A stretch of 64,000 nt of DNA from IMGVR_UViG_3300042511_000879:62001-126000; one strand, 5' to 3'; counted from the first letter of the stretch, positions 36,482 through 56,496 are shown. The notes: generated by a model not told the origin, from the letters alone. A program made the numbers and translations.

Positions 36482-36519
36482 AAAAAGTCTATATATGTTA
36501 TATTATATATAGACTTTTT
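36482..36519. repeat. 15-bp perfect inverted repeat overlapping a class-2 promoter
   Basis: AAAAAGTCTATATAT (36482-36496) and ATATATAGACTTTTT (36505-36519) with an 8-nt loop, 2 nt from the dCMP deaminase start. Confidence 0.85.
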
Positions 36520-36529
36520 ATTTAGTTTA
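36502..36529 (-). promoter_or_regulatory. Class-2 promoter KAAAC-N17-TATAAW (representative of 8 copies)
   Basis: Exact 17-nt spacing at 36502-36528, 38711-38737, 40852-40878, 44698-44724, 46789-46815, 50898-50924 and 53162-53188 (all minus) and at 56453-56479 (plus), each just upstream of a start codon. Confidence 0.75.
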
Positions 36530-36548
36530 CCGGTTGGACCGGATTTCT

Positions 36549-37031
36549 TTATTTTATATCTTCAGCGTCAGTAGCAACAGTAGCTTCTTTACTTTCATTA
36601 ATTTTCTTACTGAAAGCCTCGCTCATTTTATTTAAACATGCTTCGTATGCTTCAGATTCCATGTCTTTTTTCATTTCTTTTACACAATTAGATGCCATAC
36701 TAGCAACAAGTGATGCATTTTCAGCCATATATGTTTCTACAGTATGCTCATCATGCGCATCTTCTTCCCATGTTTTAGCTTCTGCAATAACTGCTTCATA
36801 ACACTCTTTTAATAATTCAGAAACAGGTTTTGTCTCTTCTTTAATTTCTTCAGCCTCATCTCCGATGTTTGCTTCGCCAGCTTCGTCTAGTCCTTGAACC
36901 TCTTCTGCTTCCTCTTCTGTTTCTTCTTCAGATTTAACATCAGGAGTTCCTTTAGCAACAACGTCTGCTTCTATTTCTTCGGCTCTGTCCATTTCTGAGA
37001 CAAATTCTTCGAATTTTTTAATACTTGCCAT
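36549..37031 (-). CDS. Acidic prohead-core-like protein with capsid-targeting-like leader
   Basis: MASIKKFEEFVSE|M leader, very Glu-rich, internal IAE/INE sites resembling T4 gp21 cleavage sites. Confidence 0.55.
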   Translation of the reverse strand: MASIKKFEEFVSEMDRAEEIEADVVAKGTPDVKSEEETEEEAEEVQGLDEAGEANIGDEAEEIKEETKPVSELLKECYEAVIAEAKTWEEDAHDEHTVETYMAENASLVASMASNCVKEMKKDMESEAYEACLNKMSEAFSKKINESKEATVATDAEDIK

Positions 37032-37057
37032 AATATATTTGTATTTTTATTTAATAA

Positions 37058-37459
37058 TTAATTTTGTGTTGGAGAATTAGAACTATTTGATTTTAAAGTT
37101 TTTATTAATGTAGCAATTGCTGCATCTTGTCTTTTCCATGCTGTAGTTTTTTCAACTTCTTCTCCTACTCTTGGTCTATCCGGATTGTTAGGGTCAAGTC
37201 CAACTTTTTGAAATCTACCTTTAGAGGATACACCAATCATAGAACTAGTGTCATTATCTTCTCCTTCTCTCCAATAAATTTGTACCGCATAATCAAATGT
37301 AATTCCGTCTGACCCATTTTTTTCAATAGTAGTTTCGCTAGTAACTTCTGCCCATGGGCATTTTTTAGCAACAGTATCGATTACATACTTTCTAAATTCT
37401 TCAGAAGTTTGAACTTGTTTTTCGTTTACAAATTGTTCAAATAGTTTAATATGTTTCAT
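37058..37459 (-). CDS. Hypothetical protein with capsid-targeting-like leader
   Basis: MKHIKLFEQFVNE|K leader; GATATATA motif at 37483-37490. Confidence 0.6.
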   Translation of the reverse strand: MKHIKLFEQFVNEKQVQTSEEFRKYVIDTVAKKCPWAEVTSETTIEKNGSDGITFDYAVQIYWREGEDNDTSSMIGVSSKGRFQKVGLDPNNPDRPRVGEEVEKTTAWKRQDAAIATLIKTLKSNSSNSPTQN

Positions 37460-37481
37460 TGTTTAGATTTTTATTTAGATT

Positions 37482-37799
37482 TTATATATCTTTATTTTTT
37501 AAATAACTGAAACTGTCTGATAAAAAGTAGTCTCGGAGTTTTAGATAGTGTATCAATATAAAGAATATTGAACCTCCTGGCATTACAACTATTGTTGCTA
37601 GACCTAATGTCTTAACCAGATTTATTAATTGTTTTGCAAACTTTTTACCCTCTTCGTCAGTTAAAGGTCTACGTTCTATAACGCATGTTGTTAAAAGTTT
37701 AGACATTGATTTTGTTTCAACGCCCTCTTTTTTAAGAGCCTCTAAAAATAGGTTAACATCCTTTTTTATCTTTTCTAACTCAATTGTTTTATTTTTCAC
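37482..37799 (-). CDS. Hypothetical protein with hydrophobic C-terminal segment
   Basis: ORF track; LGLATIVVMPGGSIFFILI is reminiscent of LETM1-like/membrane helices. Confidence 0.5.
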   Translation of the reverse strand: MKNKTIELEKIKKDVNLFLEALKKEGVETKSMSKLLTTCVIERRPLTDEEGKKFAKQLINLVKTLGLATIVVMPGGSIFFILIHYLKLRDYFLSDSFSYLKNKDI

Positions 37800-38706
37800 A
37801 GAGTATAAATTCTTTTTGGTATTTTTGAAGAGCCAATTCTTTTGCTTTGGCCTCTATTTCTATATCTATTTCCATTCCATAGGTATCAATAAATTCATAT
37901 AGATAATCGGCGTGTGCTCGTATAATAACACTAGGGTCTTCGTGTAGTTTTTTGGCACTTGAATAGTGACACAATTGGCGAATACCTTTAGGCCACGTAC
38001 GAGCTGCTAAAAGAAGAGCATCTTGTTCGGACATCGGGTCTTCATAGCATCTATGGTGATGGTAGTCGAATGTGATTGGAGTACCAATTGCTTCGTAAAT
38101 TCGGTAAAGGTCATTTACAGAGTATTGTGCAGGTTTATCGTCGTTTTCGAGGATTAAACGGGACTGTGCAGAAGGTGATAACAATTTAAAGTTTTCGATG
38201 AACCTTAGGATTGCTGATTCTTTGTCACCATACGAACCTCCAACATGAATATTCATCGAATAATATGGATTTGCCGGAAGACCCATCATATCTAATATAA
38301 ATGCATGTTGATTAAGTTCTTTGATAGAATTATCGACAGTTTTTTGATTTGGACTAGGCAATACACAAAACTGACCAGGATGGAATCCAATTCGCTGACC
38401 GTATTTTTGTACAAGAGAACCCGCGCCTTTTAGTAAATTTGAAATTGTTGGCCAATTTGGCAAATCAGTAAGCTCATATTCGGACATCCATGGGAACATA
38501 CTAGACGACATACGGTACAAAGTAACGCCGTTTTTATGATTCCATTTAATGATTTCTATCATGTCGCGGATATTTGCCTCTGCAAGTTCTCCAGCGTATT
38601 TGATACCTTTTGCGTCAAAGGTTTTTTTAATCATTGAACGCCCGATTTTAATACCACTCTTGTCAAGAGTCAAATTTATGCAACAATATCCGTAGTTAGC
38701 TCCCAT
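37789..38706 (-). CDS. uvsE: UV damage endonuclease UvsE/UVDE
   Basis: GYCCIN, YRMSSSMFP, HPGQFCVL, NIHVGG, LENDDK, DYHHH, HADY and EAKAKELAL motifs. Confidence 0.92.
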   Translation of the reverse strand: MGANYGYCCINLTLDKSGIKIGRSMIKKTFDAKGIKYAGELAEANIRDMIEIIKWNHKNGVTLYRMSSSMFPWMSEYELTDLPNWPTISNLLKGAGSLVQKYGQRIGFHPGQFCVLPSPNQKTVDNSIKELNQHAFILDMMGLPANPYYSMNIHVGGSYGDKESAILRFIENFKLLSPSAQSRLILENDDKPAQYSVNDLYRIYEAIGTPITFDYHHHRCYEDPMSEQDALLLAARTWPKGIRQLCHYSSAKKLHEDPSVIIRAHADYLYEFIDTYGMEIDIEIEAKAKELALQKYQKEFILCEK

Positions 38707-38735
38707 GTATATTATATTAAGTTAATTTCAAAAGT

Positions 38736-39263
38736 TTATAGAGATACAAATATTGCCTCATCCTCATTAGGAGCCGATTCTAATCCAATACCATATCGAT
38801 ACATTAGAGTATCATATCTTCTCCAGTTTTTAACAAAAGCTAGTCCCATTGTATGCGCAGAAGGTTCAATATTTAAAAATCCACAATAATCAGGATGAGA
38901 TTTGTTAAATTGATAATCTTCCGCAATTGTTTTGATAAATTGTTCCATGTCATCTAACGGTTCCTCATCGAAATAGGGCATCCCAACGTTATACATTAAT
39001 TGACAGTAGAATTTAAGAGCCTTTACATTAATATTGTCTGCATTTGCAAATGCTCTTTGCAAATCATTATCTACCACAGCTTGGACAAAACCACCACCGA
39101 CATATCCAATTTGCCATTTGGTACATAGGATTGATGTTCCTATTTGAATGATATGATTTGCATCACCATCCGCTAATTCTTTTAGTCCGGCATGCAAACC
39201 ATTTACTGCAAGATAATTTACAACGAGTTCTTTTACAACTTCTATTTTTTTGAAAGTGTCCAT
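38736..39263 (-). CDS. Hypothetical protein
   Basis: ORF track; GGGFVQAVVDNDLQRAFANAD segment. Confidence 0.6.
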   Translation of the reverse strand: MDTFKKIEVVKELVVNYLAVNGLHAGLKELADGDANHIIQIGTSILCTKWQIGYVGGGFVQAVVDNDLQRAFANADNINVKALKFYCQLMYNVGMPYFDEEPLDDMEQFIKTIAEDYQFNKSHPDYCGFLNIEPSAHTMGLAFVKNWRRYDTLMYRYGIGLESAPNEDEAIFVSL

Positions 39264-39264
39264 C

Positions 39265-39525: not shown

Positions 39526-39541
39526 AATATTTCTTTGTTTT

Positions 39542-39583
39542 AATTAGATATGTAAATATAATCAATATTGTTGAAAGGGGAAA
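39542..39583 (-). promoter_or_regulatory. Class-1 promoter
   Basis: TTTC(39583-39580)-N19-TATATTTA(39560-39553)CATATCTAATT, with TTAACA direct repeats upstream. Confidence 0.8.
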
Positions 39584-39604
39584 ATCCGAAGTGTTAATTT
39601 TTTG

Positions 39605-39778: not shown

Positions 39779-39792
39779 TTTTTCTTTGTTTT

Positions 39793-39860
39793 AATTAGAT
39801 ATGTAAATATAATCAAAAAAACCCAGATTCGAAAATCTGGGTTGTTAAAGTTTTGTTAAA
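39793..39860 (-). promoter_or_regulatory. Class-1 promoter with embedded terminator hairpin (copy B)
   Basis: TTTC(39834-39831)-N19-TATATTTA(39811-39804); hairpin AACCCAGAT/ATCTGGGTT at 39820-39843 differs by 1 nt from copy A. Confidence 0.8.
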
Positions 39861-40205
39861 TTATTTCCAGAATAGCTGGACACATATTATAATAAATGAA
39901 AGTATTAAACAAGTTATTGTCTTTGCATTTAGAGATTCATCCATCATAAAATATGTTAGGATAGAGAACGAAATCATACCCATTGCAAATCCAATAAATC
40001 TTCCTGGCCAAAGTTGACCATCGTAATATTCTGCAATCATTCTAGTTGCTTCTATAAAAACATATGATATTGTAGAACCTCCTATTACAGCAACTAGCAA
40101 TGGGTTTCTTTTAAACCACGGCCACATGAACTGACCATTTGTTTGGAACCATATAAACGATTGTCCAAATAGAAACAAAAGAATTCCATATATTAATGCT
40201 CTCAA
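39861..40205 (-). CDS. Small multi-pass membrane protein (SMR/EamA-like)
   Basis: 114 aa with about four hydrophobic helices. Confidence 0.55.
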   Translation of the reverse strand: MRALIYGILLFLFGQSFIWFQTNGQFMWPWFKRNPLLVAVIGGSTISYVFIEATRMIAEYYDGQLWPGRFIGFAMGMISFSILTYFMMDESLNAKTITCLILSFIIICVQLFWK

Positions 40206-40834
40206 AATAAGGTTCCTGTTTCGGTCAGTAGGTGAGAAATAAAACTCATTCGATGTTGCTTACTCGGACCTAATGATTTAATTGCATCAATATGTGCTTT
40301 AGTACCATATCCTTTGTTTGAATTCCAACCATATCCAGGAATCTCAATATCCAAATCTTTCATAACAGCATCTCTTTCAGTTTTAGCTAGAATACTTGCA
40401 GCCGCTATTGAAATATATTTATTGTCTCCTCCGATTATAGTTTCAAAAGGAATTCCTTCAAATCCATGGAACTGGTCTCCATCAACTAATATAAAGTCAA
40501 ATTGGGCATTTTTTTGAACTCCTTCTAAGCATCGTTGCATTCCAATTAAAGTTGCTTTTAAGATATTAGTTGATTCAATATCTTCCGGAGATATATGTAC
40601 AATGCAATATGCAATTGCATTTTCCTCAACAATTCTACGAGCCTCTTTTCGTTGTTGTTCATTTAATAATTTTGAATCTTTGATTAAGGGGTTTTCAAAG
40701 CCAAATGGCATTATGCATGCGGCAACCGTAACAGGTCCACTTAGTGAACCTCGGCCAGCCTCATCAATGCCAATTTCTATAATTGATTCATCTCCAGAAT
40801 AGGAGTGTTTAAGTAGTATTTGTCTGGTTTCCAT
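40202..40834 (-). CDS. rnhB: Ribonuclease HII
   Basis: GIDEAGRGSLSGPV, DSKLL, LVDG, IAAASILAK, NKGYGT and HRMSF motifs. Confidence 0.95.
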   Translation of the reverse strand: METRQILLKHSYSGDESIIEIGIDEAGRGSLSGPVTVAACIMPFGFENPLIKDSKLLNEQQRKEARRIVEENAIAYCIVHISPEDIESTNILKATLIGMQRCLEGVQKNAQFDFILVDGDQFHGFEGIPFETIIGGDNKYISIAAASILAKTERDAVMKDLDIEIPGYGWNSNKGYGTKAHIDAIKSLGPSKQHRMSFISHLLTETGTLF

Positions 40835-40879
40835 CTATATGTTTTATACTTATTATATAGATGGATTCCAGATAGTTTC

Positions 40880-41632: not shown

Positions 41633-41649
41633 ACAATTTTTGTATATAT

Positions 41650-41907: not shown

Positions 41908-41996
41908 CTTTCAGTGGTGTTTTTAAAAGTGGCTATAGCCACATATAGTATATATTTTAACCAGTAGAATTAAAGATATCCGGGCTAAAAAGGTTA

Positions 41997-43080: not shown

Positions 43081-43086
43081 TAGAGT

Positions 43087-43650: not shown

Positions 43651-43719
43651 ATTTGATATGTAAATATAATACAAATTCCTGACACAGAAAAACTTTTTAT
43701 CAAAAAGTTATTAACAATT
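43651..43719 (-). promoter_or_regulatory. Class-1 promoter (N18 variant)
   Basis: TTTC(43690-43687)-N18-TATATTTA(43668-43661)CATATC; upstream AATTGTTAATAAC box at 43707-43719. Confidence 0.7.
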
Positions 43720-44450
43720 TAAAATGGTACCTCATCTACCATATCCATTCCTGATATTTTAAGCATCACATTCATAGTGGCTTTAACATCTCCTTCACAA
43801 TATGTTTTTATTCTTTCAATACTACCATTCCAATACTCTTCAGTTGTACTACTTGCTTCCATTATAGTTTTAGGAGATGGAATATTAAGAGTGTTACAAA
43901 TTAAATCTAGTGATGCACTATTCCAACCTGCAAATTTCCAAATTTCATAAGTATCTACTAGACAGTTTTCCCAAGGTTTTTTCTTTTGTAAATGAAATTG
44001 ATGAGGTATTGCTACTCCGTTTACAATGGATCTTTTTATTAGATATGGAAAATCAAAGTTTTTAATATTATGTCCAGTAAATTGAACTGAAGGACTTTGA
44101 TTAAAAACAGCTTGAGCTGTACCCATAAACTCTTTAAGAATTTCTATTTCGCTACCTTTATAGAAAGAACGAATTTTTGAGGTTGTAATACCATCTTGGA
44201 ATTTAATTTGTCCCATAGAAATTACAATAACTTTGCTAAATTCTGGACTAAGCGCCGACATATGAGTATACATTTCCGCATCAGTAAGTTTTGCCAAATG
44301 AGATTCAGTATTTCTATGCTGTTCTGCTTTTTTTGCCCAATGCTTTATTCCGCCTGGTCTTTTAATACAGAATTCTTCGTAATTCGGATATTCTGAAGAT
44401 GTTTCAATGTCAATAAATAACATTGACTTTAGTTCGGTAGTATTATACAT
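43719..44450 (-). CDS. 3'-5' exonuclease, PolB-exonuclease-like (DEDD)
   Basis: LFIDIET, GHNIKNFDFPYL, KPWE...VDTYEIW and YCEGDV motifs; family common in Bacteroidota. Confidence 0.88.
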   Translation of the reverse strand: MYNTTELKSMLFIDIETSSEYPNYEEFCIKRPGGIKHWAKKAEQHRNTESHLAKLTDAEMYTHMSALSPEFSKVIVISMGQIKFQDGITTSKIRSFYKGSEIEILKEFMGTAQAVFNQSPSVQFTGHNIKNFDFPYLIKRSIVNGVAIPHQFHLQKKKPWENCLVDTYEIWKFAGWNSASLDLICNTLNIPSPKTIMEASSTTEEYWNGSIERIKTYCEGDVKATMNVMLKISGMDMVDEVPF

Positions 44451-44691
44451 TCTTTGAGTCGTTTAAATCTTTAAAAATCTTATAAATTGATATTGGGTAT
44501 ACACATTTTTTTACACTTCTATCTGACTTTTCATTCATCCAATAATATGGGACTCCATGTAATTTAGTCAGTGAATCAATTAAAGAAACTAATTGACCAT
44601 ACATAAGAATCCCTGCAAATTTAAAATAGTAATTCTCACCAATCTTTGGTTTAACTACGTAAATTTTAGGTTCTTTTTTATCTTTTGCCAT
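44443..44691 (-). CDS. Hypothetical protein
   Basis: ORF track; class-2 promoter at 44698-44724. Confidence 0.6.
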   Translation of the reverse strand: MAKDKKEPKIYVVKPKIGENYYFKFAGILMYGQLVSLIDSLTKLHGVPYYWMNEKSDRSVKKCVYPISIYKIFKDLNDSKNV

Positions 44692-44722
44692 ATACTAATT
44701 ATACACAAAAAAATAAAAAAGT

Positions 44723-44941
44723 TTAAAGATGTGTAGTGTCAACGTGGTCATGTGACTGTCGAAGTATCATATATCGATCATATGATATACTCATTTCGAT
44801 CCATCCTCCAGTAATAGATTTGGGTACTTCGTGATGGTCAATTATATAGTTTGGTGGGGTAGTAACTCTTTCTAATAAAAAGTCCATCATCAAATCTGAT
44901 TCTCTATTATGAACCCATATTTTTACAAATGTATTATTCAT
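44723..44941 (-). CDS. Hypothetical protein
   Basis: ORF track; overlaps the glycosyltransferase stop. Confidence 0.55.
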   Translation of the reverse strand: MNNTFVKIWVHNRESDLMMDFLLERVTTPPNYIIDHHEVPKSITGGWIEMSISYDRYMILRQSHDHVDTTHL

Positions 44942-46784
44942 GTTCGTTATATATTATATTTGCCGCCATCTCTTCTTGATTAAATCTTGACACTGTATTT
45001 AACGGTGCACCTGGATTTTCGTCATACGCCCAATCTTTTAATCCTAACTCTTCAAACCTGTTTTTGATTTGCTCGTTATAATAATAACCTATTGTACGTA
45101 CTCGTCTTTGAATATCTGCTCTTGATAGATTATGAGTATTCTGTCCATTTGCATTATTATATAAGAATTGAATATACCCTAATTTTGGTATTTTGCAAGT
45201 TATTGCTTTTAAGAAAGTTCTTACAACCAACTCATAATCATCGGCTATTACAAGACTTCTATTATGTCCTCCTATTTCAAAATAAGTAGATCGTCTCCAT
45301 GCTCTTACGTGATTTGGTACACCAACTATATGTCTAATTGTTTTAGGATTAATATTCTGTTGATTAGAAACATTTAGTGTCTTTCCAGCATACTCTTCTT
45401 TTCTATATGATCCGTATCCAAGCGCAAATCCTTCGCTATATGTTAAAGAATTCCAGTTTTCATCAACTTCAACAGTGTCATTAAAAAAGAATCCGGCTTC
45501 TGGATGTTTTTTAGCTGCTTTATAAAGGTCTTCAGTACACCATGGAACTAATAAATCGTCATGGTCTAATTCAGCTAAAATAAAACCTTTAGCCATTGAG
45601 CAACATCTCCATTTAACCTCACCAATATTTCCACCGCTTTTTTCTCTAAAATCATAAAGGCGTACTCTTGGGTCTTTTGCTGCAATAGATTCTGCTATTT
45701 TTAATGTTTTACCACCATCAGTAGAGTCATTTACTAGTACCCATTCCCAATTGTTGTATGTTTGGTCTAGCAGCGATTGATATGTATTAAATAGTTTTTC
45801 ACCAGTATTATATATTGGGGTAAAATATGATATCATTGAACTATCTTCTAATCCATCTGGGTTCAACAGACTTTCCATTAAACACTGATACGCGATTTGT
45901 CCAGCATCTCTAGTGGAAACTTCTTTGTCAAGATTTAACCATTTTCGTCTAAATTGAAGTGGCATGCTTGCCATTTCTGGAAAGTTTTCCCAAGATTCTC
46001 CTCTAGTTATAATAACGTCTGGTTTAAATGAGGCTAGGGATATTGTGATGTCTTTGTCATTTTTTAAATACTTAATCTCCAAACTATCATCTTCATAGTC
46101 AAGTATTTTAAGTGATTTTAATTCAGGCTCATCATGCCCAATATACAATACTTTAGGAACTTTTGCAGTTGATTTTTTCTGTAAGTAATTGTAGTGTGAT
46201 AGTACTCTTCCCGTAAATGTAAACCATTCAGGATGTTCGGCATGAACGGAACTTATAAAGATTCCATCAGCTTGATAATCAGGCAAATATGAATATTCAT
46301 ATTCATTATAAACATCAATACTAACAATATATTGAGCTAAATCAACTCCCTGCACTTTCATAAATTTAGGATATGCTTTTCTATATGTTAAGTTTGTAAA
46401 ATCTCTTCCGGCAACATGTTGTGAAACTACATGGATTTTTTTGTCTGGATTCTTTAAAGAAGATTGCAAAACATATTCATAGAAACCTTCATGCATGATA
46501 TTATCATCATCTAAAAAATAAACCCAACCATCTGATAATTTTGAAATTATGGCAGAACATTGAGGATATAACATTCCTATAGCATCTCCTTTTTCAAAAT
46601 GGTATGTTGTTAGATCGTCTTTTAAATCACATAGTAATTCTGCATCAATATCTTTAAGATTTGTAGTGTCAAATACTATGTGCCAATTTATTTCGCATCC
46701 ATTTGGTATATTGTTAAAGACAGATTCTTTAACAGTCTTTAAATTCTGTAGGCGCGTTGCTCGAGTTATTATACTAATTTTCAT
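44934..46784 (-). CDS. Tandem GT-A (GT2-like) glycosyltransferase, two catalytic domains
   Basis: Domain 1: ISIITRATR...WVYFLDDDN. Domain 2: ISYFTPIYN...WEWVLVNDSTDG...AELDHDD...ADDYEL. Confidence 0.88.
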   Translation of the reverse strand: MKISIITRATRLQNLKTVKESVFNNIPNGCEINWHIVFDTTNLKDIDAELLCDLKDDLTTYHFEKGDAIGMLYPQCSAIISKLSDGWVYFLDDDNIMHEGFYEYVLQSSLKNPDKKIHVVSQHVAGRDFTNLTYRKAYPKFMKVQGVDLAQYIVSIDVYNEYEYSYLPDYQADGIFISSVHAEHPEWFTFTGRVLSHYNYLQKKSTAKVPKVLYIGHDEPELKSLKILDYEDDSLEIKYLKNDKDITISLASFKPDVIITRGESWENFPEMASMPLQFRRKWLNLDKEVSTRDAGQIAYQCLMESLLNPDGLEDSSMISYFTPIYNTGEKLFNTYQSLLDQTYNNWEWVLVNDSTDGGKTLKIAESIAAKDPRVRLYDFREKSGGNIGEVKWRCCSMAKGFILAELDHDDLLVPWCTEDLYKAAKKHPEAGFFFNDTVEVDENWNSLTYSEGFALGYGSYRKEEYAGKTLNVSNQQNINPKTIRHIVGVPNHVRAWRRSTYFEIGGHNRSLVIADDYELVVRTFLKAITCKIPKLGYIQFLYNNANGQNTHNLSRADIQRRVRTIGYYYNEQIKNRFEELGLKDWAYDENPGAPLNTVSRFNQEEMAANIIYNEHE

Positions 46785-46834
46785 ATTATTTATATAATAA
46801 AAATGAAATTAGTTTATATTTTTTTGGGATTTAT

Positions 46835-49956: not shown

Positions 49957-50880
49957 TTATATTACGTCAAAAAAGAACATGTGAAAGAATCTTGCGTTCT
50001 CAATAGCATCGCCAAAATATTTACTTGGCGCATGAATTTGTTTAGAATCGAATAGAACTAAACGGTTGTATACATTACCAACCTCATCGATTTTATCAAA
50101 ATTAGTTGAATCATAAAAATTTGCTTGAGCATTCTTGCCTTTAAATGTATCTTCAAACACAGAATAGTCTTCAAAATTATCAAATCTTTTTTTACCAGTA
50201 TTTTTACCAGAATAGAAAGATGTACCTGTTTCGAATGGAGCATCTTTAGTTAAGAATACCATTCCTGCATACATCTGACTGTCAACATGAAATACGGGTA
50301 GATCGCTTGCTACACAATATTGGAATACTCCATTTGCATAACTTTCATAATTCCAGTTTATAATTTCGCGGCCAATTATCTTTTCTAATTTCTCTTTAGT
50401 GCCATCTAGAATAAACCTAGTTTGACTTCTTTTACCTTTGTGATAATCAGAGGGGTTGTATTCTAGATTATTCATTGCAAAATCTCTAATAAAGTCAGGA
50501 TCTGCATAAAAATTATCAACTACAATTAGACTTTTATTTTCATTATAGAATCCAGAATAATAAGCAATAAAATTATCAATGCTTCCTGGATTATAAATAA
50601 GTTCTCCAAATTTAACTTGAATCTTTGCGCCTTTAGAGATATTAAAAACTAATCCAACACTATCATCTTCTAAAGGATAATATTTAGAAACATCTGGACG
50701 ACTAATAACTGTTAATGGTATTTCAATATCATCGACTATCAATGAACTAACTGGTTTAAAGGAATCACCGTCTTTTACTAGAATCCAACCAGTTGCATTA
50801 TAGTTATTATCGGATACTTTGGTAATTGAATCAAAAAACCAAAAAACGTTTGGATCTTTTGTAAAAGTGTTATAAATCAT
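49957..50880 (-). CDS. 2OG-Fe(II) oxygenase-like protein with an extra N-terminal beta domain
   Basis: LIVVDNFYADPD start of the catalytic domain, HVD...H (QIHAP)...R iron/2OG motif, NRLVLFDS. Confidence 0.75.
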   Translation of the reverse strand: MIYNTFTKDPNVFWFFDSITKVSDNNYNATGWILVKDGDSFKPVSSLIVDDIEIPLTVISRPDVSKYYPLEDDSVGLVFNISKGAKIQVKFGELIYNPGSIDNFIAYYSGFYNENKSLIVVDNFYADPDFIRDFAMNNLEYNPSDYHKGKRSQTRFILDGTKEKLEKIIGREIINWNYESYANGVFQYCVASDLPVFHVDSQMYAGMVFLTKDAPFETGTSFYSGKNTGKKRFDNFEDYSVFEDTFKGKNAQANFYDSTNFDKIDEVGNVYNRLVLFDSKQIHAPSKYFGDAIENARFFHMFFFDVI

Positions 50881-50906
50881 ATGTTTGTTTTTTGTTTATT
50901 ATACAA

Positions 50907-52880
50907 TTATTTAAAAGAAAGTTTCTCATCTCCTTTTTTATATGAAATCGTGTACGTTTTATTTCCTTTAACAATTTCTTTAGCTAAAATACCATCTGCT
51001 AATAAGTCTTCAACATACGTTTGAATTGCTCTTTTAAGAGGTCTAGCTCCATATTGAGCATCATACCCACGTTCTGCTAAAAATACTATCGCCGTTTTTG
51101 CAACTTTAATAATATATTCTTGTTCAACCATTCTTTCAATTACTTTTTGAATTTCGATTTCTGCAATTTTAGCAACATCTTCTTGTTTTAATCCATCAAA
51201 CAATACTATTTCATCCAATCTATTTAAGAATTCCGGAGCAAATTTGTTTTTAAGCTCTTTTCTGATAACAGTTTCCATTTCCATTTTGTGGGTGGCCGTA
51301 GAACTTGAACTTGAGAATCCGATTCCAGCCCCAAATTCTGCAACTCTTTTTGCTCCAACATTACTTGTCATAATAATGATAGTATTCGTAAAGTCAATAG
51401 TTCTACCAAGAGTATCTGTTAAACGACCCTCATCTAAAACCTGTAACAAGATATTGAAAATATCTGGGTGGGCCTTTTCAACTTCATCAAATAATACTAC
51501 TGAATATGGTTTACGTCGGACTTGTTCTGTTAACTGTCCACCATCCTCATGTCCTTCATATCCCGGAGGAGAACCAATAAGTCTACTTACGTTAAACTTT
51601 TCTTGGTATTCTGACATGTCGATTCTGATTAAAGAATCCTCGCTTCCGAAATAATATTCAGAAAGGGCTTTAACAGTTTCAGTTTTACCAACTCCAGTAG
51701 GTCCAATAAACATAAATGAACCGATAGGTTTTTTAGATGAACTTACTCCAGTTCGGCTTCTTTTAATAACTCTACATAGACCTTCAACCGCAGTATCTTG
51801 CCCGATAATCATCGCTTTTAATTCATTTTCCATATCAATAACAATTCTGCTCTCGTCATCGGTCATTCTTGTTACCGGAATTCCAGTAGATTCAGAAATT
51901 ACTTCAGCAATATCTTCATAAGTTACTGCCTTCTTATTTAGTCTAAGCGTCTCCTCCCATTCTTTGGTTCTTTTTGTTATCTCTTCTCGCTTACTAATTT
52001 CAAGGTCTCTTAAATTTCCGGCTTTTTCATAATTAGTAGCATCTGCTGCTTTTAACTTTGCGGCTTTTAATTTATCAGCTTCAATTTCAAGTTCTTTAAT
52101 AATTTCTGGAATTTTTACCTCTTTTAAATGTACTTTTGCTCCAGCCTCGTCCATAACATCAATTGCTTTGTCCGGTAATTCTCTTTGAGTAATATATCGG
52201 TCAGATAATACTACACAGGCTTTAATAGCGTCAGGAGTATATGATACTGAATGGAAGTCTTCGTAATTTGGTTTAATTCTGTCTAGAATTTCGATTGCAT
52301 CTTCAAGGGATGGTGGGTCTATAAAGATTTCTTGGAATCTTCTGGTAAGAGCTCCATCGGTTTCAATATTTTCACGATACTCATCGATTGTCGTAGCACC
52401 AATACATTGTACTTGTCCTCTTGCCAATGCCGGTTTTAAGATATTACTAGCATCTAATGAACCACTTACACCACCAGCGCCTACAATTGTGTGAATCTCA
52501 TCAATAAAGACAATAACATCTGGGTTCTCTTTAAGTTCATCAACAATGTTTTTCATTCGTTCCTCAAATTCTCCACGGTATTTTGTACCTGCAACTACGT
52601 TTGCAATATTAAGAGCAATTATACGTTTATTAAGAAGAGTCATTGCAACTTTCTTTTCAACAATACGTTGCGCAATTGCTTCAACTAGTGCAGTTTTACC
52701 AACCCCAGGATCCCCTAAAATAATTGGATTGTTTTTCTTTCTACGAGAAAGGATTTGACATATTCTATGGACCTCTTTTTCTCTTCCGATGATAGGGTCA
52801 AGTTTCCCATCTGCCGCTAGTTTAGTTAAGTCCTCTCCGAATTGGTCAATGAATGGAGTATTTGTTTTCTTACTGGTCAT
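50907..52880 (-). CDS. clpC: ClpC-type Hsp100 ATPase lacking the Clp N-terminal repeat domain
   Basis: Two AAA+ modules (GDPGVGKT and GPTGVGKT), UVR middle domain (NYEKAGNLRD), IGF loop (GAGIGFS); sequence begins directly at the D1 pre-helix. Confidence 0.92.
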   Translation of the reverse strand: MTSKKTNTPFIDQFGEDLTKLAADGKLDPIIGREKEVHRICQILSRRKKNNPIILGDPGVGKTALVEAIAQRIVEKKVAMTLLNKRIIALNIANVVAGTKYRGEFEERMKNIVDELKENPDVIVFIDEIHTIVGAGGVSGSLDASNILKPALARGQVQCIGATTIDEYRENIETDGALTRRFQEIFIDPPSLEDAIEILDRIKPNYEDFHSVSYTPDAIKACVVLSDRYITQRELPDKAIDVMDEAGAKVHLKEVKIPEIIKELEIEADKLKAAKLKAADATNYEKAGNLRDLEISKREEITKRTKEWEETLRLNKKAVTYEDIAEVISESTGIPVTRMTDDESRIVIDMENELKAMIIGQDTAVEGLCRVIKRSRTGVSSSKKPIGSFMFIGPTGVGKTETVKALSEYYFGSEDSLIRIDMSEYQEKFNVSRLIGSPPGYEGHEDGGQLTEQVRRKPYSVVLFDEVEKAHPDIFNILLQVLDEGRLTDTLGRTIDFTNTIIIMTSNVGAKRVAEFGAGIGFSSSSSTATHKMEMETVIRKELKNKFAPEFLNRLDEIVLFDGLKQEDVAKIAEIEIQKVIERMVEQEYIIKVAKTAIVFLAERGYDAQYGARPLKRAIQTYVEDLLADGILAKEIVKGNKTYTISYKKGDEKLSFK

Positions 52881-52931
52881 ATTGTGTATATTAATTTATT
52901 ATGGTAGTATTATAATATGTGCGGATCCCTG

Positions 52932-53144
52932 TTATGAATGGGTACCTTTTAAATTGTTAACCGAACGTTGAACACATTCAGGACATAGAGATGCAGTGGC
53001 TTCGGCTCCTACAACAGTCCAGTTCTCGCATGGTCCATCTTCAGGCCCATATTCTGCCCATTTACTCTTTTCCGGTTCTGAATTCTGACAAATCATCGAT
53101 ACGACCTTACGGCCTTTAACTTCAGTTTCTTTAGTTTTCCACAT
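52932..53144 (-). CDS. Small putative zinc-binding protein
   Basis: C...C...CPEC pattern; class-2 promoter at 53162-53188. Confidence 0.6.
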   Translation of the reverse strand: MWKTKETEVKGRKVVSMICQNSEPEKSKWAEYGPEDGPCENWTVVGAEATASLCPECVQRSVNNLKGTHS

Positions 53145-53189
53145 AGTATATTTATTTTAGATTTATATTGAGTTATTCCAATTTGTTTC

Positions 53190-54590
53190 AGGGTAAACTT
53201 AAAGAACCTTTGAGTTAAGTGAAAAATTTTTATTCTGTAATTCAGACCGGGTGCACCCTCCTATTGCGTGGGAAAATTTGGGTTTCAATCATCAAAAAAA
53301 TGAAATAATCTACCAGAACGATTGAACCGTTGAGGCCGTTTGAAATACATAAAGTCACATTGAGGGACTATTGGGCGGCCCTCCCCTAGCCCTATTAATA
53401 CCTATTGGCACATCGGTCGTCACAGTATACTGAGCACTCTATTGGAGGTATCAGAATGGGTGTGTCCTTCCTGTAGATACTCTATATAATAACGGATGTA
53501 CACTATAGGGGTTTTTAAATATCGTATACTATTAGATAGAATAGTTCTCTTTTTAATTAGAATCCCTACAGCACGCCCCCACCCCGCCCCTTTGGGACTC
53601 TATGGGATAGAGGTCAATTTTATTTTTTTCTATAGGATTTTTTTGAGAGCTTAGAGACTTGGAGTACCTCAGAGAGGTGAGAGAGCGGTGAGTCACCCTA
53701 CCTTTCACCTTTGAGACTTGGATACTTCTTATATCCTCATAGGACCTATTAGTTTCAACGGGTTACTCTTTATTTCACAGTACACTTCGTGCCTGACACA
53801 GTACCCTCAGGTCAATCTGAGCCAACCATCGGTAATTGGTAACGGTCTTATTGGTTAATTATAGGTTCTTTATGTTTCTAGTAACGGTGATATCCATTCT
53901 ATCGGTCTCAATTGGTCTTTGGTCACCTTCCGGACCTGGGTAATTTTTTGGGTAGGGCAACATTGAAGTACTCTGAGGGTGGGATGGACCATTGGCTACC
54001 ATCGGAGGACCATCAGAGGACCATTGACGCTGGGAGGGTCTCTCAACATTGAGGTATTGATATTCCCGGACGGGGATAATTCGTCCACTTCTATGAAACA
54101 CATTTATCAAAGGTCTATATTAGTTAGGAAGTCTAGAGCTTTGATCCTACAGTCCTTTGAGAACCTCTAGACCTGGCTTTTATAAGGATCCACCCTGGGT
54201 GCTGACCGCTCCGTAGACCTGCCCAACCGGTATTGAGGGTCAATGCACACGTGCCCTAGAGTCCAGTGGTGACTGGAAGAGTCCTGCTCTACCCTAGTTA
54301 CCCTGTGTCTGTAGTGAACTATTAGTATTATTGTCATTCTTGTGCAGAGCACACCTGCATTGTGCAGGCATTGACCTGCATTGCCTATTGCAACAGTTGA
54401 TCAGTGCACTACAGGTAGATAGGTCTATTGCCCTTACAACAATATTGAGCCTATTGAGCATATTGAACCTTTGAGGACATTGAGTAATCATTGAATTGCA
54501 TTGATTATTGCTACAGGGCATTGAGCCGGGCATTGCTACAGGACATTGATCCTGGACATTGCGCCGGGCATTGATCTGGGGACATTGATC
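53190..54590. other. Non-coding, GC-richer, repeat- and hairpin-rich island (left)
   Basis: About 1.4 kb without a credible gene in an otherwise fully packed genome; many (C/T)ATTG and GGACCAT motifs, hairpins and C runs. Confidence 0.7.
54350..54590 (+). repeat. Degenerate short-period (C/T)ATTG array
   Basis: About 19 ATTG copies between 54359 and 54587, mostly spaced 9-14 nt; the later copies read GG(A/G)CATTG. Confidence 0.85.
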
Positions 54591-54593
54591 CTC

Positions 54594-55298
54594 CTATTTG
54601 AATCTGGGAGTATTGATCCTGGGAGAGTTGAAACGGAGATTAGGCGCGGAGATACTCTTCTGTTTATAAGCTGGGCCTAGGTCCCTTTCTGGTGCCTTAT
54701 AAGGGGACATTGTATTTGTCTTGTCAAAACTTGTTATAGGGAATGGGGCTGGTTCCGATACCTTATTATTAGATGGGTCATATTGTTTTTGGCTAGTACG
54801 TTTTATAGGTGCACTATCTGGTTGTTTATTAACATTTGCGTTAGGGTCTCCATTATCGTGCCCGAAGTCACTATCTATAGAACCTCTATCTCCACCTGTA
54901 TTGTTTGCTATCATATTACCCATTTGTGCATCTATAAGAGATTCTTTAAACCCCTTAGAACGAGGTTGAGGTGTTTGAGCTATATCGGTTTCCTTAGTTG
55001 GTGTTTGGGCCTGATCGCTTGACGATAGTGTTTGTTTATCGTATTGGACATTTTGATTGGCTGGATTATTTTGCTTTCGGGCAGTATCTGAGGTTGCCTT
55101 ATTACCCTGTTGGGTTTGAGCATTAACATCACTTCCAGCCTTATTTATACCCGTTGCATCTATAGGAGATATTGAACTGTCTCCTGGGGATGGATTTAAA
55201 CTACTAGGAACTGATGAGGTATCTGTCTTATTAGAGGTTTGAGTCTTAGCAGCATTTACCCTATCGCTTATACTAATTTGAGTTAGACCTATCTTCAT
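54594..55298 (-). CDS. Low-complexity, probably disordered S/T/Q/P/D-rich protein
   Basis: 705-nt open frame with few hydrophobic residues. Confidence 0.6.
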   Translation of the reverse strand: MKIGLTQISISDRVNAAKTQTSNKTDTSSVPSSLNPSPGDSSISPIDATGINKAGSDVNAQTQQGNKATSDTARKQNNPANQNVQYDKQTLSSSDQAQTPTKETDIAQTPQPRSKGFKESLIDAQMGNMIANNTGGDRGSIDSDFGHDNGDPNANVNKQPDSAPIKRTSQKQYDPSNNKVSEPAPFPITSFDKTNTMSPYKAPERDLGPAYKQKSISAPNLRFNSPRINTPRFK

Positions 55299-55413
55299 AT
55301 AGTTTTTCTAGTTCCATTTGGAGCTTTCTGATTTTTAGGAAGTTATTTGGATCCGTCATTTTAGTTTCCAATATCTCCTTGTTAAGTTGAGCAATACGTA
55401 ATCTGTTTTCCAT
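55273..55413 (-). CDS. 46-aa hypothetical protein (below the ORF-track cut-off)
   Basis: Hand translation MENRLRIAQLNKEILETKMTDPNNFLKIRKLQMELEKLYEDRSNSN*; AATATATA motif at 55439-55446. Confidence 0.5.
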   Translation of the reverse strand: MENRLRIAQLNKEILETKMTDPNNFLKIRKLQMELEKLYEDRSNSN

Positions 55414-55444
55414 GATGATATGTGTTTAGGTTATACTCTATATA

Positions 55445-55876
55445 TTATGCTTCCATTGGAACTTGGTAAGGAACGTATGCTCTATCAGCCCAAGTTTTAG
55501 CTCCTACTGCGCTATATTGTGCTTGGTTATAAAGGTTTGTATTTCTATATAGTTGATTAATCGTACCTACTGTTAGGTTACCCATTATTAACTCATCCAT
55601 TAAGACTATTTTGTTCCCTTTACGGGCGAATAATGTTAGGTAATAATCTCCACCATCTGGGCAGAATTCAACTGTTTGTAAGGCACTTTTATTATAACCT
55701 GTGATGATTGATTCTGGGTAGGTCATGAAATATTCGTTTTCATAGTCTTTAGCATCTACTATGGTCATCCAACCCGCTTTACATTTTGTTATGAAACGGA
55801 ATTTACCTTTTGTGTTTGGAAAGGCTCCTAATACGTTTACTGTTCGTACGTCTGTTGTGTTTACTAAATTTGTCAT
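55445..55876 (-). CDS. Hypothetical protein under a class-1 promoter
   Basis: ORF track; promoter at 55901-55931. Confidence 0.7.
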   Translation of the reverse strand: MTNLVNTTDVRTVNVLGAFPNTKGKFRFITKCKAGWMTIVDAKDYENEYFMTYPESIITGYNKSALQTVEFCPDGGDYYLTLFARKGNKIVLMDELIMGNLTVGTINQLYRNTNLYNQAQYSAVGAKTWADRAYVPYQVPMEA

Positions 55877-55887
55877 AATGGTGTGTT

Positions 55888-56032
55888 TTAATTAGATATG
55901 TAAATATAATCATTATTTGTGATTCCGGAAACTGTTTGCGCAAGTATTTTCAGAAAGTTATTAACAATTGTTGTTCATAAGTTTTTTGAGAAACTGTTTC
56001 GGGATTCATATAAATTGATTATATTTACATAT
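55888..56032. promoter_or_regulatory. Divergent pair of class-1 promoters
   Basis: Minus: TTTC(55931-55928)-N19-TATATTTA(55908-55901). Plus: TTTC(55997-56000)-N19-TATATTTA(56020-56027). Confidence 0.85.
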
Positions 56033-56039
56033 GAAAAAT

Positions 56040-56165
56040 AGCAAAATGACATAACGGGTTCGTATAGCACAAAGAATCGAGAGATTCGACACGGGCGGTC
56101 CTTTAAACCAGGGGAGGAAGAGTAGACTCCAGCTCGTCTTCTATTTAGAGGTCTGAAACGCCACT
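56040..56165 (+). ncRNA. Candidate small structured RNA
   Basis: Lies directly downstream of a class-1 promoter, has no usable ORF (ATG...TAA after 7 codons), is GC-richer, and contains a GAATC-GAGA-GATTC GNRA hairpin plus nested stems. Confidence 0.45.
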
Positions 56166-56167
56166 AG

Positions 56168-56245
56168 AAACTTTAACAAAAAATTAACATAAAATAGTTT
56201 CGGTTCTTGAAACTATTGATTATATTTACATATCTAATTAAAACA
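56168..56245 (+). promoter_or_regulatory. Class-1 promoter
   Basis: TTAACA repeats, TTTC(56198-56201)-N19-TATATTTA(56221-56228)CATATCTAATT. Confidence 0.85.
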
Positions 56246-56252
56246 AAGAACT

Positions 56253-56447
56253 ATGAAAATCACCATCAACATCCTTCCAGCCTTAGGTTCCCTAATCGCG
56301 TTCGGGCTTACGTATTCCTTATTAACTGGAACTCTTCAAAAATTCATACCATTCCATGGTACCCTTAATGAAATGACAACTACAATATGTCTATTTTGGA
56401 TAGGTACTCTTTTATTGTTCTGCTCATTCGAAAAATTTAACAAATAA
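56253..56447 (+). CDS. Small membrane protein (two hydrophobic helices)
   Basis: ORF track; follows a class-1 promoter. Confidence 0.6.
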   Translation: MKITINILPALGSLIAFGLTYSLLTGTLQKFIPFHGTLNEMTTTICLFWIGTLLLFCSFEKFNK

Positions 56448-56496
56448 TACTGAAACAAAACCAATTTTTAATATATAAATCTAAAATCTTATAACT

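What the first reader, a model, noticed from the sequence alone, without database searches (positions are those of the whole stretch)
36502..56479. Class-2 bipartite promoter KAAAC-N17-TATAAW marks the metabolic genes
Seen: eight copies with exact N17 spacing, before dCMP deaminase, uvsE, rnhB, 44691, the glycosyltransferase, the 2OG oxygenase, 53144 and the DUF932-like gene; a near match (TAAC-N16-TATAAT) precedes clpC. None was noticed before structural genes. Known: sigma70-type -35/-10 geometry, but the -35 is not TTGACA and does not fit the Bacteroidota consensus. Inference: middle promoters read by a phage sigma factor or activator, completing a three-tier programme readable from sequence alone.
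Basis: partly seen in the sequence, partly recalled or inferred. Interest (0 to 1): 0.6.

Follow-up and report, generated by a model that had tools for sequence, protein, structure and literature searches.

The report
Phage sigma-factor promoters before replication genes
A strictly spaced two-box DNA signal (GAAAC or TAAAC, 17 bases, TATAAT or TATAAA) sits in front of the DNA-replication and nucleotide-metabolism genes of a 236-kb marine jumbo phage and its many uncultured relatives; it is most likely the middle-stage promoter read by a sigma factor the phage itself encodes, an ordinary kind of phage gene switch in a group where it had not been described.

Summary
KAAAC-N17-TATAAW occurs 11 times in the window against 0.99 expected. 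Genome-wide there are 28 sense-strand copies at N17 against 0-5 at any other spacing from N12 to N23. Two more sense copies lie at 35746 and 63326, and one antisense hit at 11997 is probably chance.

The sites sit 4-25 nt upstream of ATGs. The genes behind them encode dCMP deaminase, UvdE, RNase HII, a clamp loader, helicase, primase, gp32 and similar functions. No sense-strand site precedes the tail-fibre and large-protein genes of window 1-35 kb or the gp23-like capsid gene.

The phage encodes a 204-aa ECF-type sigma factor. Its -35 recognition helix resembles that of B. subtilis SigW, whose -35 element is TGAAAC. That sigma gene always sits behind a different, Bacteroidota-sigmaA-like promoter. 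A gp55-like late sigma gene sits behind the KAAAC-N17/18-TATAAW motif in relatives.

This wiring reads as a cascade: host sigma, then phage ECF sigma, then late sigma. The N17 peak persists in relatives down to 33% sigma identity.

The timing, the start sites and which sigma reads the motif are inferred, not measured. This is a new member of a known kind, the phage sigma cascade. Interest is moderate.

The parts
35746..35773 (-). Class-2 promoter (GAAAC-N17-TATAAT). The ATG is at 35727 and opens a 171-codon ORF ending at 35212.
36502..36529 (-). Class-2 promoter (TAAAC-N17-TATAAT) before the dCMP deaminase gene 35964-36479. The ATG is 22 nt after the hexamer.
38711..38738 (-). Class-2 promoter before the UvdE UV-endonuclease gene 37789-38706. 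The ATG is 4 nt after the hexamer, so a leaderless mRNA is predicted. Both boxes are conserved upstream of UvdE orthologues at 64-100% identity, while the flanks and spacer vary.
40852..40879 (-). Class-2 promoter before the RNase HII gene 40202-40834. The ATG is 17 nt after the hexamer.
44698..44725 (-). Class-2 promoter before the 82-aa ORF 44443-44691 (no family hit). The ATG is 6 nt after the hexamer.
46789..46816 (-). Class-2 promoter before the 616-aa GT2 glycosyltransferase gene 44934-46784. The ATG is 4 nt after the hexamer, so a leaderless mRNA is predicted.
50898..50925 (-). Class-2 promoter before the 307-aa DUF6445 protein gene 49957-50880. The ATG is 17 nt after the hexamer.
53162..53189 (-). 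Class-2 promoter before the 70-aa ORF 52932-53144. The ATG is 17 nt after the hexamer.
56452..56479 (+). Class-2 promoter on the + strand before the 378-aa ORF 56497-57633 (only an unnamed PHROG hit). The ATG is 17 nt after the hexamer.
63326..63353 (-). Class-2 promoter (TAAAC-N17-TATAAT) before the 183-aa polynucleotide-kinase-like gene 62754-63305. Its -10 region also forms a class-3 box, GATATATAA, at 63327-63335.
11997..12024 (+). Pattern match that is probably chance. It is antisense inside the 1224-aa ORF 8861-12535 and is not counted as a promoter.
39551..39560 (-). Context: the -7-like box TATATTTACA of a class-1 (putative early, host-sigmaA-like) promoter cassette. Other window copies are at 23519-23528, 39802-39811, 43659-43668 and 55899-55908.
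8806..8814 (-). Context: a class-3 box GATATATAA (putative late, gp55-like-sigma type) before the 1500-aa ORF 4279-8781. Other window copies are at 14559-14567, 23496-23504 and 37482-37490.

Best explanation
KAAAC-N17-TATAAW is a genuine, orientation-specific promoter class of a T4-like jumbo phage with a probable Bacteroidota host, and of a large family of uncultured relatives. The fuller consensus is not-C, K, AAAC, WWW, N13, R, TATAAW, N3, Y, A.

The most likely reader is host core RNA polymerase carrying the phage's own 204-aa ECF-type sigma factor. That gene lies at genome 210720-211334, - strand, outside the window. Its sigma-4 helix would bind the -35 box GAAAC/TAAAC and its sigma-2 domain the TATAAW box.

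The inferred order of events has three steps:
1. Host sigmaA reads the long class-1 cassettes, whose -7 box is TATATTTACA / TATATTTG. One of these drives the ECF sigma gene.
2. The ECF sigma switches on class-2 promoters. These drive the replication, repair and nucleotide-metabolism genes, many small ORFs, and the gp55-like late sigma gene.
3. The gp55-like sigma reads GATATATAA (class 3) before the capsid and tail genes.

Transcription probably starts at the conserved A five bases after the hexamer. On that reading about a quarter to a third of class-2 transcripts are leaderless and the rest have leaders of 12-21 nt.

**Shown:** the motif, its spacing specificity, its position, its conservation, the gene identities, the sigma family assignments and the promoter-gene wiring.
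**Inferred:** which sigma reads which class, the timing and the start site.
For: **Spacing and position**
- Spacing specificity is 28 against 0-5, with sharp loss of the peak on any single substitution. This fits the known need of ECF sigmas for near-consensus promoters (PMC7776599).
- 24 of the 28 sense sites lie wholly or partly outside called genes, although only 5.7% of the genome is noncoding. 24 of the 28 end 1-25 nt before a called start.

**Conservation in relatives**
- Loci around the sigma orthologues give N17 counts of 26, 63, 136 and 5 in four identity bands.
- Loci around UvdE orthologues give 338 at N17 against 22 or fewer at other spacings.
- A complete 256-kb relative gives 18 at N17. 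LR756500, a 462-kb phage whose sigma is 33% identical, gives 33 at N17 and 19 at N18.
- Upstream of UvdE the two boxes persist while the upstream gene, the flanks and the spacer change.

**The sigma factor**
- Pfam r2 + r4_2. TIGR02937 scores 59.5, above its cut-off. The best solved relative is SigW, at 1.3e-10.
- The recognition helix is TIKNRIRRG, against SigW TVKTRIHRG. It keeps T168, K170, R172 and R175. R175 and K170 make base contacts to G-35 and C-31; T168 and R172 contact backbone phosphates (PMC6713349, SigW -35 = TGAAACnTTT).
- The helix is kept in LR756500, where the motif is present. It is altered in Lak-A1, where no N17 peak is seen.

**Wiring**
- The sigma gene lies behind class 1 and never behind class 2 in 62 distinct relatives.
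- The gp55-like gene (phrog_234, 1.3e-8; homologues annotated as late sigma) lies behind GAAAC-N18-TATAAA here, and behind exact N17/N18 sites in 36 of 51 distinct relatives.

**Genes behind class 2**: gp44-like clamp loader, SbcC-like protein, DnaB-like helicase, primase, gp32, dCMP deaminase, UvdE, RNase HII and a PNK-like protein.

**Start-site inference from 409-411 distinct family sites**
- A at offset 4 in 76% of sites, and a pyrimidine at offset 3 in 68%.
- The ATG distance is bimodal: 4-6 nt in 104 sites, none at 7-9 nt, and a second peak at 16-18 nt.

**No MotA or AsiA** was found in the genome.
Against: - There are no 5'-end or time-course data. The only RNA runs found were assembled contigs of relatives in a marine metatranscriptome, which cannot show starts.
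- ECF sigmas usually use a CGT-type -10 box, including in flavobacteria (PMC9723704). A TATAAT-like -10 is atypical for the family.
- The -10 hexamer overlaps the core of the class-3 box. The gp55-like sigma, or one sigma for both classes, therefore cannot be excluded by sequence.
- The control phages PTm1 and MaF61, which lack the peak, still carry divergent sigma-like genes. The presence/absence contrast rests on few genomes.
- LR756500 has four ECF-like sigmas.
- The host is not identified. 'Bacteroidota' rests on relatives, on the lack of Shine-Dalgarno sequences (18 of 326 genes) and on the class-1 box.
Confidence: 0.65

Rival explanations
1. Sigma appropriation. Host sigmaA still reads the -10 box, and a phage DNA-binding activator binds GAAAC in place of sigma region 4, as MotA and AsiA do in T4.
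For: The phage has a T4-like replication module and a gp55-like late sigma. T4 middle promoters are likewise a -10 box plus a non-host box near -30 (PMC2988021). The inferred position of the hexamer, -10 to -5, coincides with the flavobacterial sigmaA -7 box position (PMC9723704).
Against: The hexamer lacks the TTTG half that dominates the Bacteroidota sigmaA box. No MotA or AsiA homologue was found in the contig. A complete two-domain ECF sigma with a SigW-like -35 helix is present and conserved together with the motif.
Confidence: 0.1
2. The gp55-like small sigma, or a single phage sigma, reads both class 2 and class 3. GAAAC would be only an auxiliary upstream element, and the two motifs would not be separate temporal tiers.
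For: TATAAW overlaps the class-3 core ATATATAA. Two sites, at window 63326 and genome 203834, carry both forms. gp32 has both a class-2 and a class-3 promoter.
Against: The gp55-like gene itself depends on a class-2 promoter across the family, which would be circular. At 123 aa, the gp55-like protein has no sigma-4 domain to read a -35 box. GAAAC is invariant and strictly spaced rather than auxiliary. The two classes precede different gene sets.
Confidence: 0.12
3. A host ECF sigma, for example an envelope-stress sigma induced by infection, reads the motif, and the phage sigma has another role.
For: GAAAC is a generic ECF -35 element (PMC6713349, PMC5758882). Bacteroidota carry many ECF sigmas.
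Against: The flavobacterial ECF-type motif found by TSS mapping has a CGT -10 box, not TATAAT (PMC9723704). The motif tracks the phage sigma orthologue across relatives, including a 24%-GC megaphage that probably has a different host. The nearest sigma homologues in bacterial genome bins are at most 36% identical.
Confidence: 0.06
4. The motif is a compositional or chance by-product of AT-rich intergenic DNA.
For: Intergenic regions are rich in TATAA.
Against: The spacing profile uses the same words in the same DNA as its own control and still shows a single spike at N17, on one strand only. The spike recurs in over 400 distinct sites in diverged relatives.
Confidence: 0.02

Closest known systems
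Bacillus phage SPO1 sigma cascade (host sigmaA, then gp28 for middle genes, then gp33/gp34 for late genes)
   Same: A lytic phage without its own RNA polymerase uses host sigma for early genes. An early-encoded phage sigma then reads a bipartite middle promoter, and middle genes encode the late specificity factor (PMC13401047 for the outline; the details are from my own knowledge).
   Different: The middle sigma here is of the ECF (group 4) type and has a different consensus. The late factor is gp55-like (T4 type), not gp33/34. The probable host is Bacteroidota. Nothing has been tested experimentally.
Phage phiEco32 gp36, a phage-encoded distant sigma that reads middle and late promoters
   Same: A small phage sigma with sigma2-like and sigma4-like domains replaces host sigma70 on host core and reads phage-specific promoters (PMC12276001).
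   Different: phiEco32 promoters are defined mainly by AATGTA centred at -11.5, and one sigma serves both the middle and late classes with the co-factor gp79. Here a strict -35/-10 pair with N17 spacing marks one class and a separate gp55-like factor is available for late genes. No gp79-like factor was looked for.
Phage T4 middle (MotA/AsiA) and late (gp55/gp33/gp45) transcription
   Same: The same functional gene set (clamp loader, gp32, helicase, primase, dCMP deaminase, UV endonuclease, RNase H, PNK) sits behind the middle-type promoter. A gp55-like sigma and a -10-only late box (GATATATAA here, TATAAATA in T4) are present (PMC2988021, PMC2988020).
   Different: No MotA or AsiA was found. 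A free-standing ECF sigma appears to take the place of sigma appropriation.
B. subtilis SigW / ECF01-type promoters (TGAAACnTTT-N16-CGTA)
   Same: The -35 box, including the W-tract after GAAAC, matches. The DNA-contacting residues T, K, R, R of the recognition helix are shared. Promoter stringency is high (PMC6713349, PMC5758882, PMC7776599).
   Different: The -10 box is TATAAW, not CGTA, and the spacer is 17 rather than 16. The sigma is not autoregulated: no class-2 site lies upstream of its gene in 62 relatives. No anti-sigma is evident. It serves a viral timing role rather than a stress response.

Membership tests
Bacterial-type bipartite (-35/-10) promoter | Two conserved boxes at a fixed spacing, specific to one strand | tested here: met
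   N17 gives 28 sense sites against 0-5 at other spacings and 0-2 on the antisense strand. Single-base variants are not enriched.
Bacterial-type bipartite (-35/-10) promoter | Location just upstream of genes, in the sense orientation, mostly intergenic | tested here: met
   24 of the 28 sense sites lie wholly or partly outside called genes, and 24 of 28 end 1-25 nt before a called start; all ten sense sites in the window are followed by an ORF of 70-616 codons.
Bacterial-type bipartite (-35/-10) promoter | Transcription starts a few bases downstream of the -10 box | not testable with these tools
   Only assembled contigs of RNA runs were available. Indirect support: a conserved Y-A at offsets 3/4, and a sharp peak of ATGs at offset 4 with a gap at 7-9.
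ECF (group 4) sigma factor (the 204-aa phage protein) | Sigma-2 and sigma-4 domains only, about 200 aa, scoring above the family threshold | tested here: met
   Sigma70_r2 scores 32.2 bits and Sigma70_r4_2 35.3 bits, both above cut-off, with no region 3 or region 1 hit. TIGR02937 scores 59.5 bits against a cut-off of 42.9. PDB hits are SigW, RpoE, SigH and SigE.
ECF (group 4) sigma factor (the 204-aa phage protein) | Cognate promoter with an AAC-containing -35 box | tested here: met
   The -35 box is K-AAAC, followed by W3, which matches the SigW TGAAACnTTT and sigmaE GGAACTT consensus (PMC6713349). That this sigma is the one reading it is inferred.
ECF (group 4) sigma factor (the 204-aa phage protein) | CGT-type -10 box, autoregulation and a cognate anti-sigma (common but not universal ECF traits) | tested here: not met
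   The -10 box is TATAAW. No class-2 motif lies upstream of the sigma gene in 62 relatives. An anti-sigma was not searched for specifically.
Specific NCBIfam ECF subfamilies (Sig70_bacteroi1, SigW equivalog) | Score above the subfamily cut-off | tested here: not met
   TIGR02985 scores 78.6 against a cut-off of 126.4. The SigW models score 74.1 against 209 and 65.5 against 243. The protein is therefore ECF superfamily only. The nearest genome-bin homologues are at most 36% identical.
T4 gp55-type late sigma (the 123-aa protein at genome 10597-10968) | Sequence similarity to gp55-family proteins, with a region-2-only architecture | tested here: met
   phrog_234 'late sigma transcription factor', 1.3e-8. 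A weak region-2 match only. Homologues in Xanthomonas jumbo phages are annotated as late sigma. The function itself is not tested.
T4 MotA/AsiA middle-promoter system | Presence of MotA and AsiA | tested here: not met
   There are no matches to PF09114 or PF09010 at E <= 1 in the 236-kb contig.
Bacteroidota sigmaA promoter (-33 TTTG / -7 TAnnTTTG) | A TAnnTTTG box at -12 to -5 | tested here: not met
   Class 2 has TATAAW with no TTTG half. Class 1 of the same genome does carry TATATTTA(C), or TATATTTG in relatives (PMC9723704).

The most novel reading that the evidence does not exclude
A large, globally distributed family of marine and freshwater jumbo phages and megaphages with probable Bacteroidota hosts shares a transcription programme that can be deduced fully from sequence. 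An ECF-type sigma has been re-tooled to read a TATAAT-like -10 box, unlike cellular ECF sigmas. It replaces T4-style sigma appropriation for middle genes, produces a large fraction of leaderless mRNAs, and switches on the gp55-type late sigma. If true, this would give a portable, orthogonal sigma/promoter pair for Bacteroidota and a sequence-only way to assign temporal classes to thousands of uncultured phage genes.
Probability: 0.5. Interest if true: 0.6.

Novelty: new member of a known kind. Interest (0 to 1): 0.5.

Why it matters
Promoters of phages that infect Bacteroidota are almost unknown, and host promoters in that phylum are atypical. This makes gene regulation in these abundant marine phages hard to read.

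A strict, conserved sigma/promoter pair would matter in four ways:
- It lets temporal class be assigned from sequence to hundreds of uncharacterised genes in more than 100 related metagenomic contigs.
- It predicts a concrete, testable cascade: host sigma, then ECF sigma, then gp55-like sigma.
- It offers a candidate orthogonal expression switch for flavobacteria.
- It gives an example of an ECF-family sigma paired with a TATAAT-type -10 box and with frequent leaderless transcripts.

The principle itself, phage sigma cascades, is textbook, so this extends known biology rather than changing it.

Tried and rejected
- **Near-identical phage records.** Megablast of 10 kb of the window against 50,697 phage records found nothing.
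- **RNA evidence.** One marine metatranscriptome held 7% of the sampled words. Laying them showed diverged pieces of relatives, at about 85-95% likeness, and no usable start information. This is no evidence for or against start sites.
- **Relaxing the motif by one mismatch at N16-N18.** The extra hits show no preference for N17 (48 against 48 and 51), so they are mostly noise and were not added to the regulon. The exception is TATAA[CG] at N17, with 5 hits, which also appears upstream of the gp55-like gene in relatives.
- **Sigma-less control phages.** PTm1 and MaF61 lack the N17 peak, but each still carries a divergent sigma-like ORF below the family cut-off. They serve only as 'different sigma' controls, not 'no sigma' controls.
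- **Lak-A1.** 400 kb of its 542 kb was examined. There is no N17 peak and at most a slight excess at N18, so the result is inconclusive.
- **Rfam.** A scan of the whole window found no known RNA family.
- **Specificity code.** The paper on rewiring ECF specificity (PMC7776599) did not yield a residue-to-base code in the text I could search.
- **Searches and folds not used.** The large protein searches and structure prediction were not run, because the family scans already placed the sigma.

Full report
**What the window is.** The window is bases 62001-126000 of a 236,071-bp IMG/VR virus contig. The contig has 34% G+C, and about 90% of its ORFs lie on the - strand. Its tail, 233,192-236,071, is a 92-95% identical copy of its head, 1-2,097. 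The contig therefore wraps around a roughly 233-kb genome. Protein searches link it to uncultured huge phages (LR756500 and others), to the Prevotella Lak phages, and more weakly to Tenacibaculum phage PTm1 and Flavobacterium phage MaF61. Only 18 of 326 ORFs have a Shine-Dalgarno-like core, as expected for a Bacteroidota host (PMC6847099). The genome has a gp23-type capsid gene, and genes for gp32, a gp44-like clamp loader, primase and a DnaB-like helicase. It is a distant T4-like jumbo phage.

**Checking the observation.** KAAAC-N17-TATAAW matches 11 times in the window against 0.99 expected. The stronger control is the spacing profile, which uses the same words in the same DNA. On the sense strand of the whole genome the counts for N12 to N23 are 4, 5, 1, 4, 3, 28, 4, 1, 0, 2, 2, 2. 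The antisense strand gives 0-2 at every spacing. Replacing any one base of either box removes the N17 peak. 24 of the 28 sense sites lie wholly or partly outside called genes, although only 5.7% of the genome is noncoding, and 24 of 28 end 1-25 nt before a called start codon. Two more sense copies lie at 35746 and 63326. The + strand hit at 11997 is antisense inside a large ORF and is probably chance. The three bases after KAAAC are A or T. A purine precedes TATAAW in 90% of 409 family sites. A pyrimidine-A pair sits at offsets 3 and 4 after the hexamer, with A in 76% of sites.

**What the sites precede.** In the window they precede dCMP deaminase, UvdE, RNase HII, a GT2 glycosyltransferase, a DUF6445 protein, a PNK-like protein and four ORFs with no named family. 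Elsewhere in the genome they precede a gp44-like clamp-loader subunit, an SbcC/Rad50-like ATPase, a DnaB-like helicase, primase, gp32, myo-inositol-1-phosphate synthase, a DUF2828/DUF7788 protein and several small ORFs. This is essentially the prereplicative gene set of T4 (PMC2988021). No sense site occurs in window 1-35,700, which holds tail-fibre-like and very large proteins, or before the gp23-like capsid gene.

**Two other promoter-like classes.** Word enrichment in upstream regions and inspection show two further classes.
- **Class 1** is a roughly 75-nt cassette with about 32 sense copies. It often contains a terminator-like hairpin. It has a TTTTACCG/TTTCCGG box about 20 nt upstream of TATATTTACA, followed by TAATTAAAACAAA and the ATG. 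In relatives the box reads TATATTTG, TATATTAGC and similar. It is therefore a variant of the Bacteroidota sigmaA box TAnnTTTG, which lies at -12 to -5 in Flavobacterium (PMC9723704).
- **Class 3** is GATATATAA, with 27 sense copies against 1 antisense copy. It has no upstream partner. It lies before large structural genes and 110 nt before the capsid gene. It recalls the T4 late box TATAAATA (PMC2988020).

**The candidate readers.** The genome has two sigma-like genes.
- **The 204-aa protein** (genome 210720-211334, - strand) has Sigma70_r2 and Sigma70_r4_2 domains and no region 3. It passes the curated ECF superfamily model, TIGR02937, at 59.5 bits against a cut-off of 42.9, but passes no subfamily model. 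Its best solved relative is B. subtilis SigW.
  - In the HMMER alignment the recognition helix is TIKNRIRRG, against SigW TVKTRIHRG. In the SigW sigma-4/DNA crystal structure, R175, T171 and K170 read G-35, A-34 and the G opposite C-31 of T-G-A-A-A-C-x-T-T-T. T168 and R172 hold the backbone (PMC6713349).
  - The phage protein keeps T, K, R and R. It has N in place of T171 and R in place of H174.
  - The class-2 -35 box (G/T)AAAC followed by an A/T tract is thus what this helix would be expected to bind. That is an inference by homology.
- **The 123-aa protein** (genome 10597-10968) matches PHROG 234, 'late sigma transcription factor', at 1.3e-8. Its homologues in Xanthomonas jumbo phages are annotated as late sigma.
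- No MotA or AsiA homologue is present.

**Wiring.** The ECF sigma gene is preceded by a class-1 cassette here. In all 62 distinct relatives examined, 36 match the strict pattern and the other 26 have variant -7 boxes visible in the alignment. None has a class-2 motif. The gp55-like gene is preceded here by GAAAC-N18-TATAAA. Of 51 distinct relatives at 74-100% protein identity, 31 have an exact N17 site and 5 an exact N18 site. Most of the remaining 15 have GAAAC-N17-TATAAG or TATAAC, even though the spacer has been replaced, often by a terminator hairpin whose loop holds the GAAAC. This gives a direction: class 1, then the ECF sigma, then class 2, then the gp55-like sigma, then class 3. If class 1 needed the phage sigma, or class 2 needed the gp55-like protein, the circuit could not start.

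**Conservation and co-occurrence.**
- Around sigma orthologues at 96-100%, 76-81%, 56-67% and 38-39% identity, the N17 counts are 26, 63, 136 and 5. Little is seen at other spacings apart from a secondary N18 signal.
- Around UvdE orthologues, N17 gives 338 against 22 or fewer elsewhere. Both boxes stay in place upstream of UvdE while the upstream gene and the spacer differ. In a few lineages a class-1 cassette has replaced them.
- A complete 256-kb relative shows 18 at N17. The 462-kb, 24%-GC phage LR756500 shows 33 at N17 and 19 at N18, with sites such as GAAACATTTT...TTTGCATATAAT before ATGs. Its orthologous sigma keeps the helix QTVKNRIARG.
- Lak-A1, whose helix is STVKNYLYKG, shows no N17 peak.
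- PTm1 and MaF61 show none either, but each has a divergent sigma-like ORF below cut-off. These contrasts are suggestive rather than strong.
- The nearest homologues in bacterial genome bins are at most 36% identical, and the top nine are in Bacteroidota bins.

**Start site and leaders (inferred).** In 411 distinct family sites the distance from the hexamer to the ATG of an ORF of at least 50 codons is bimodal. The counts are 68 at 4 nt, 12 at 5 nt and 24 at 6 nt. There are none at 7-9 nt and few at 10-15 nt. A peak follows at 16-18 nt (27, 35, 39) and tails off to 25 nt. Together with the Y-A pair at offsets 3 and 4, this places the start at the A five bases after the hexamer. That is the usual pyrimidine-purine signature, and leaderless promoters favour A (PMC7776599). 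On this reading the UvdE and glycosyltransferase mRNAs in the window are leaderless, and most others have leaders of 12-21 nt. It also puts TATAAW at -10 to -5, the same place as the flavobacterial -7 box.

**What could not be shown.** No raw-read RNA data exist for this phage. The one marine metatranscriptome with related contigs gives no ends. Promoter activity, timing and the assignment of sigmas are therefore inferences. The atypical TATAAT-like -10 box for an ECF sigma, and the overlap of that hexamer with the class-3 core, are the main reasons to keep the rivals open.

**Comparison with known systems.** The logic is that of SPO1 (host sigma, then gp28, then gp33/34) and phiEco32 (gp36; PMC12276001), combined with a T4-type late factor. 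Iyer and colleagues noted that T4-like 'group 2' jumbo phages encode both minimal and fuller sigma factors (PMC7824862). I found no paper that gives their promoters in phages of Bacteroidota, but the library is incomplete.

**Verdict.** This is a new member of a known kind, of moderate interest.

Noticed in passing
window 23519-23528, 39551-39560, 39802-39811, 43659-43668, 55899-55908 (the -7-like boxes; each cassette extends about 50 nt upstream): A roughly 75-nt cassette is repeated about 32 times in the genome. It reads AATTTTAACAC, then often a hairpin plus T-run, then TTTTACCG, then TTGATTATATTTACAT, then TAATTAAAACAAA and the ATG. It looks like a terminator fused to a strong early promoter of the Bacteroidota sigmaA type. 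It precedes small ORFs and the phage ECF sigma gene.
   Followed up: partly
window 8806-8814, 14559-14567, 23496-23504, 37482-37490, 63327-63335: GATATATAA boxes occur 27 times on the sense strand against once on the antisense strand genome-wide. They have no -35 partner and lie before structural genes and the gp23-like capsid gene. They resemble T4 late promoters and fit the gp55-like sigma encoded at genome 10597-10968.
   Followed up: partly
genome 233192-236071 against 1-2097 (outside the window): The contig tail repeats the contig head at 92-95% identity, with an indel of about 800 nt. This is a wrap-around of a circularly permuted or terminally redundant genome assembled from two strains. 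It duplicates one class-2 site.
   Followed up: yes
window about 53200-60000: This stretch has higher G+C (0.39-0.42 against 0.32) and holds the only + strand gene block of the window. It carries iteron-like repeats: CATTGATCC/CATTGAGCC at 54442-54592 and TGAGGAACAT x4.5 at 59754-59800. It could be an origin, a protein-binding array or an acquired island.
   Followed up: no
window 38706 and 46784 (ATGs of UvdE and of the glycosyltransferase): The start codons lie exactly 4 nt after the -10 hexamer. Across the phage family this distance is the single commonest one (68 of 349 sites with an ORF). That implies leaderless mRNAs at a rate well above the 5.5% reported for Flavobacterium psychrophilum (PMC9723704).
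   Followed up: partly
genome 54920-54971 (outside the window), upstream of the gp32-like gene: A class-2 promoter and a class-3 box lie side by side before the ssDNA-binding protein gene. This suggests expression in both the middle and late phases.
   Followed up: no
L277-L333 (relatives), upstream of the gp55-like gene: In many relatives the GAAAC box lies in the loop of a terminator-like hairpin (AAGCCCATTTG-GAAAC-AAATGGGCTTTTTT). The end of the upstream transcript and the -35 box of the next promoter therefore share the same bases.
   Followed up: no
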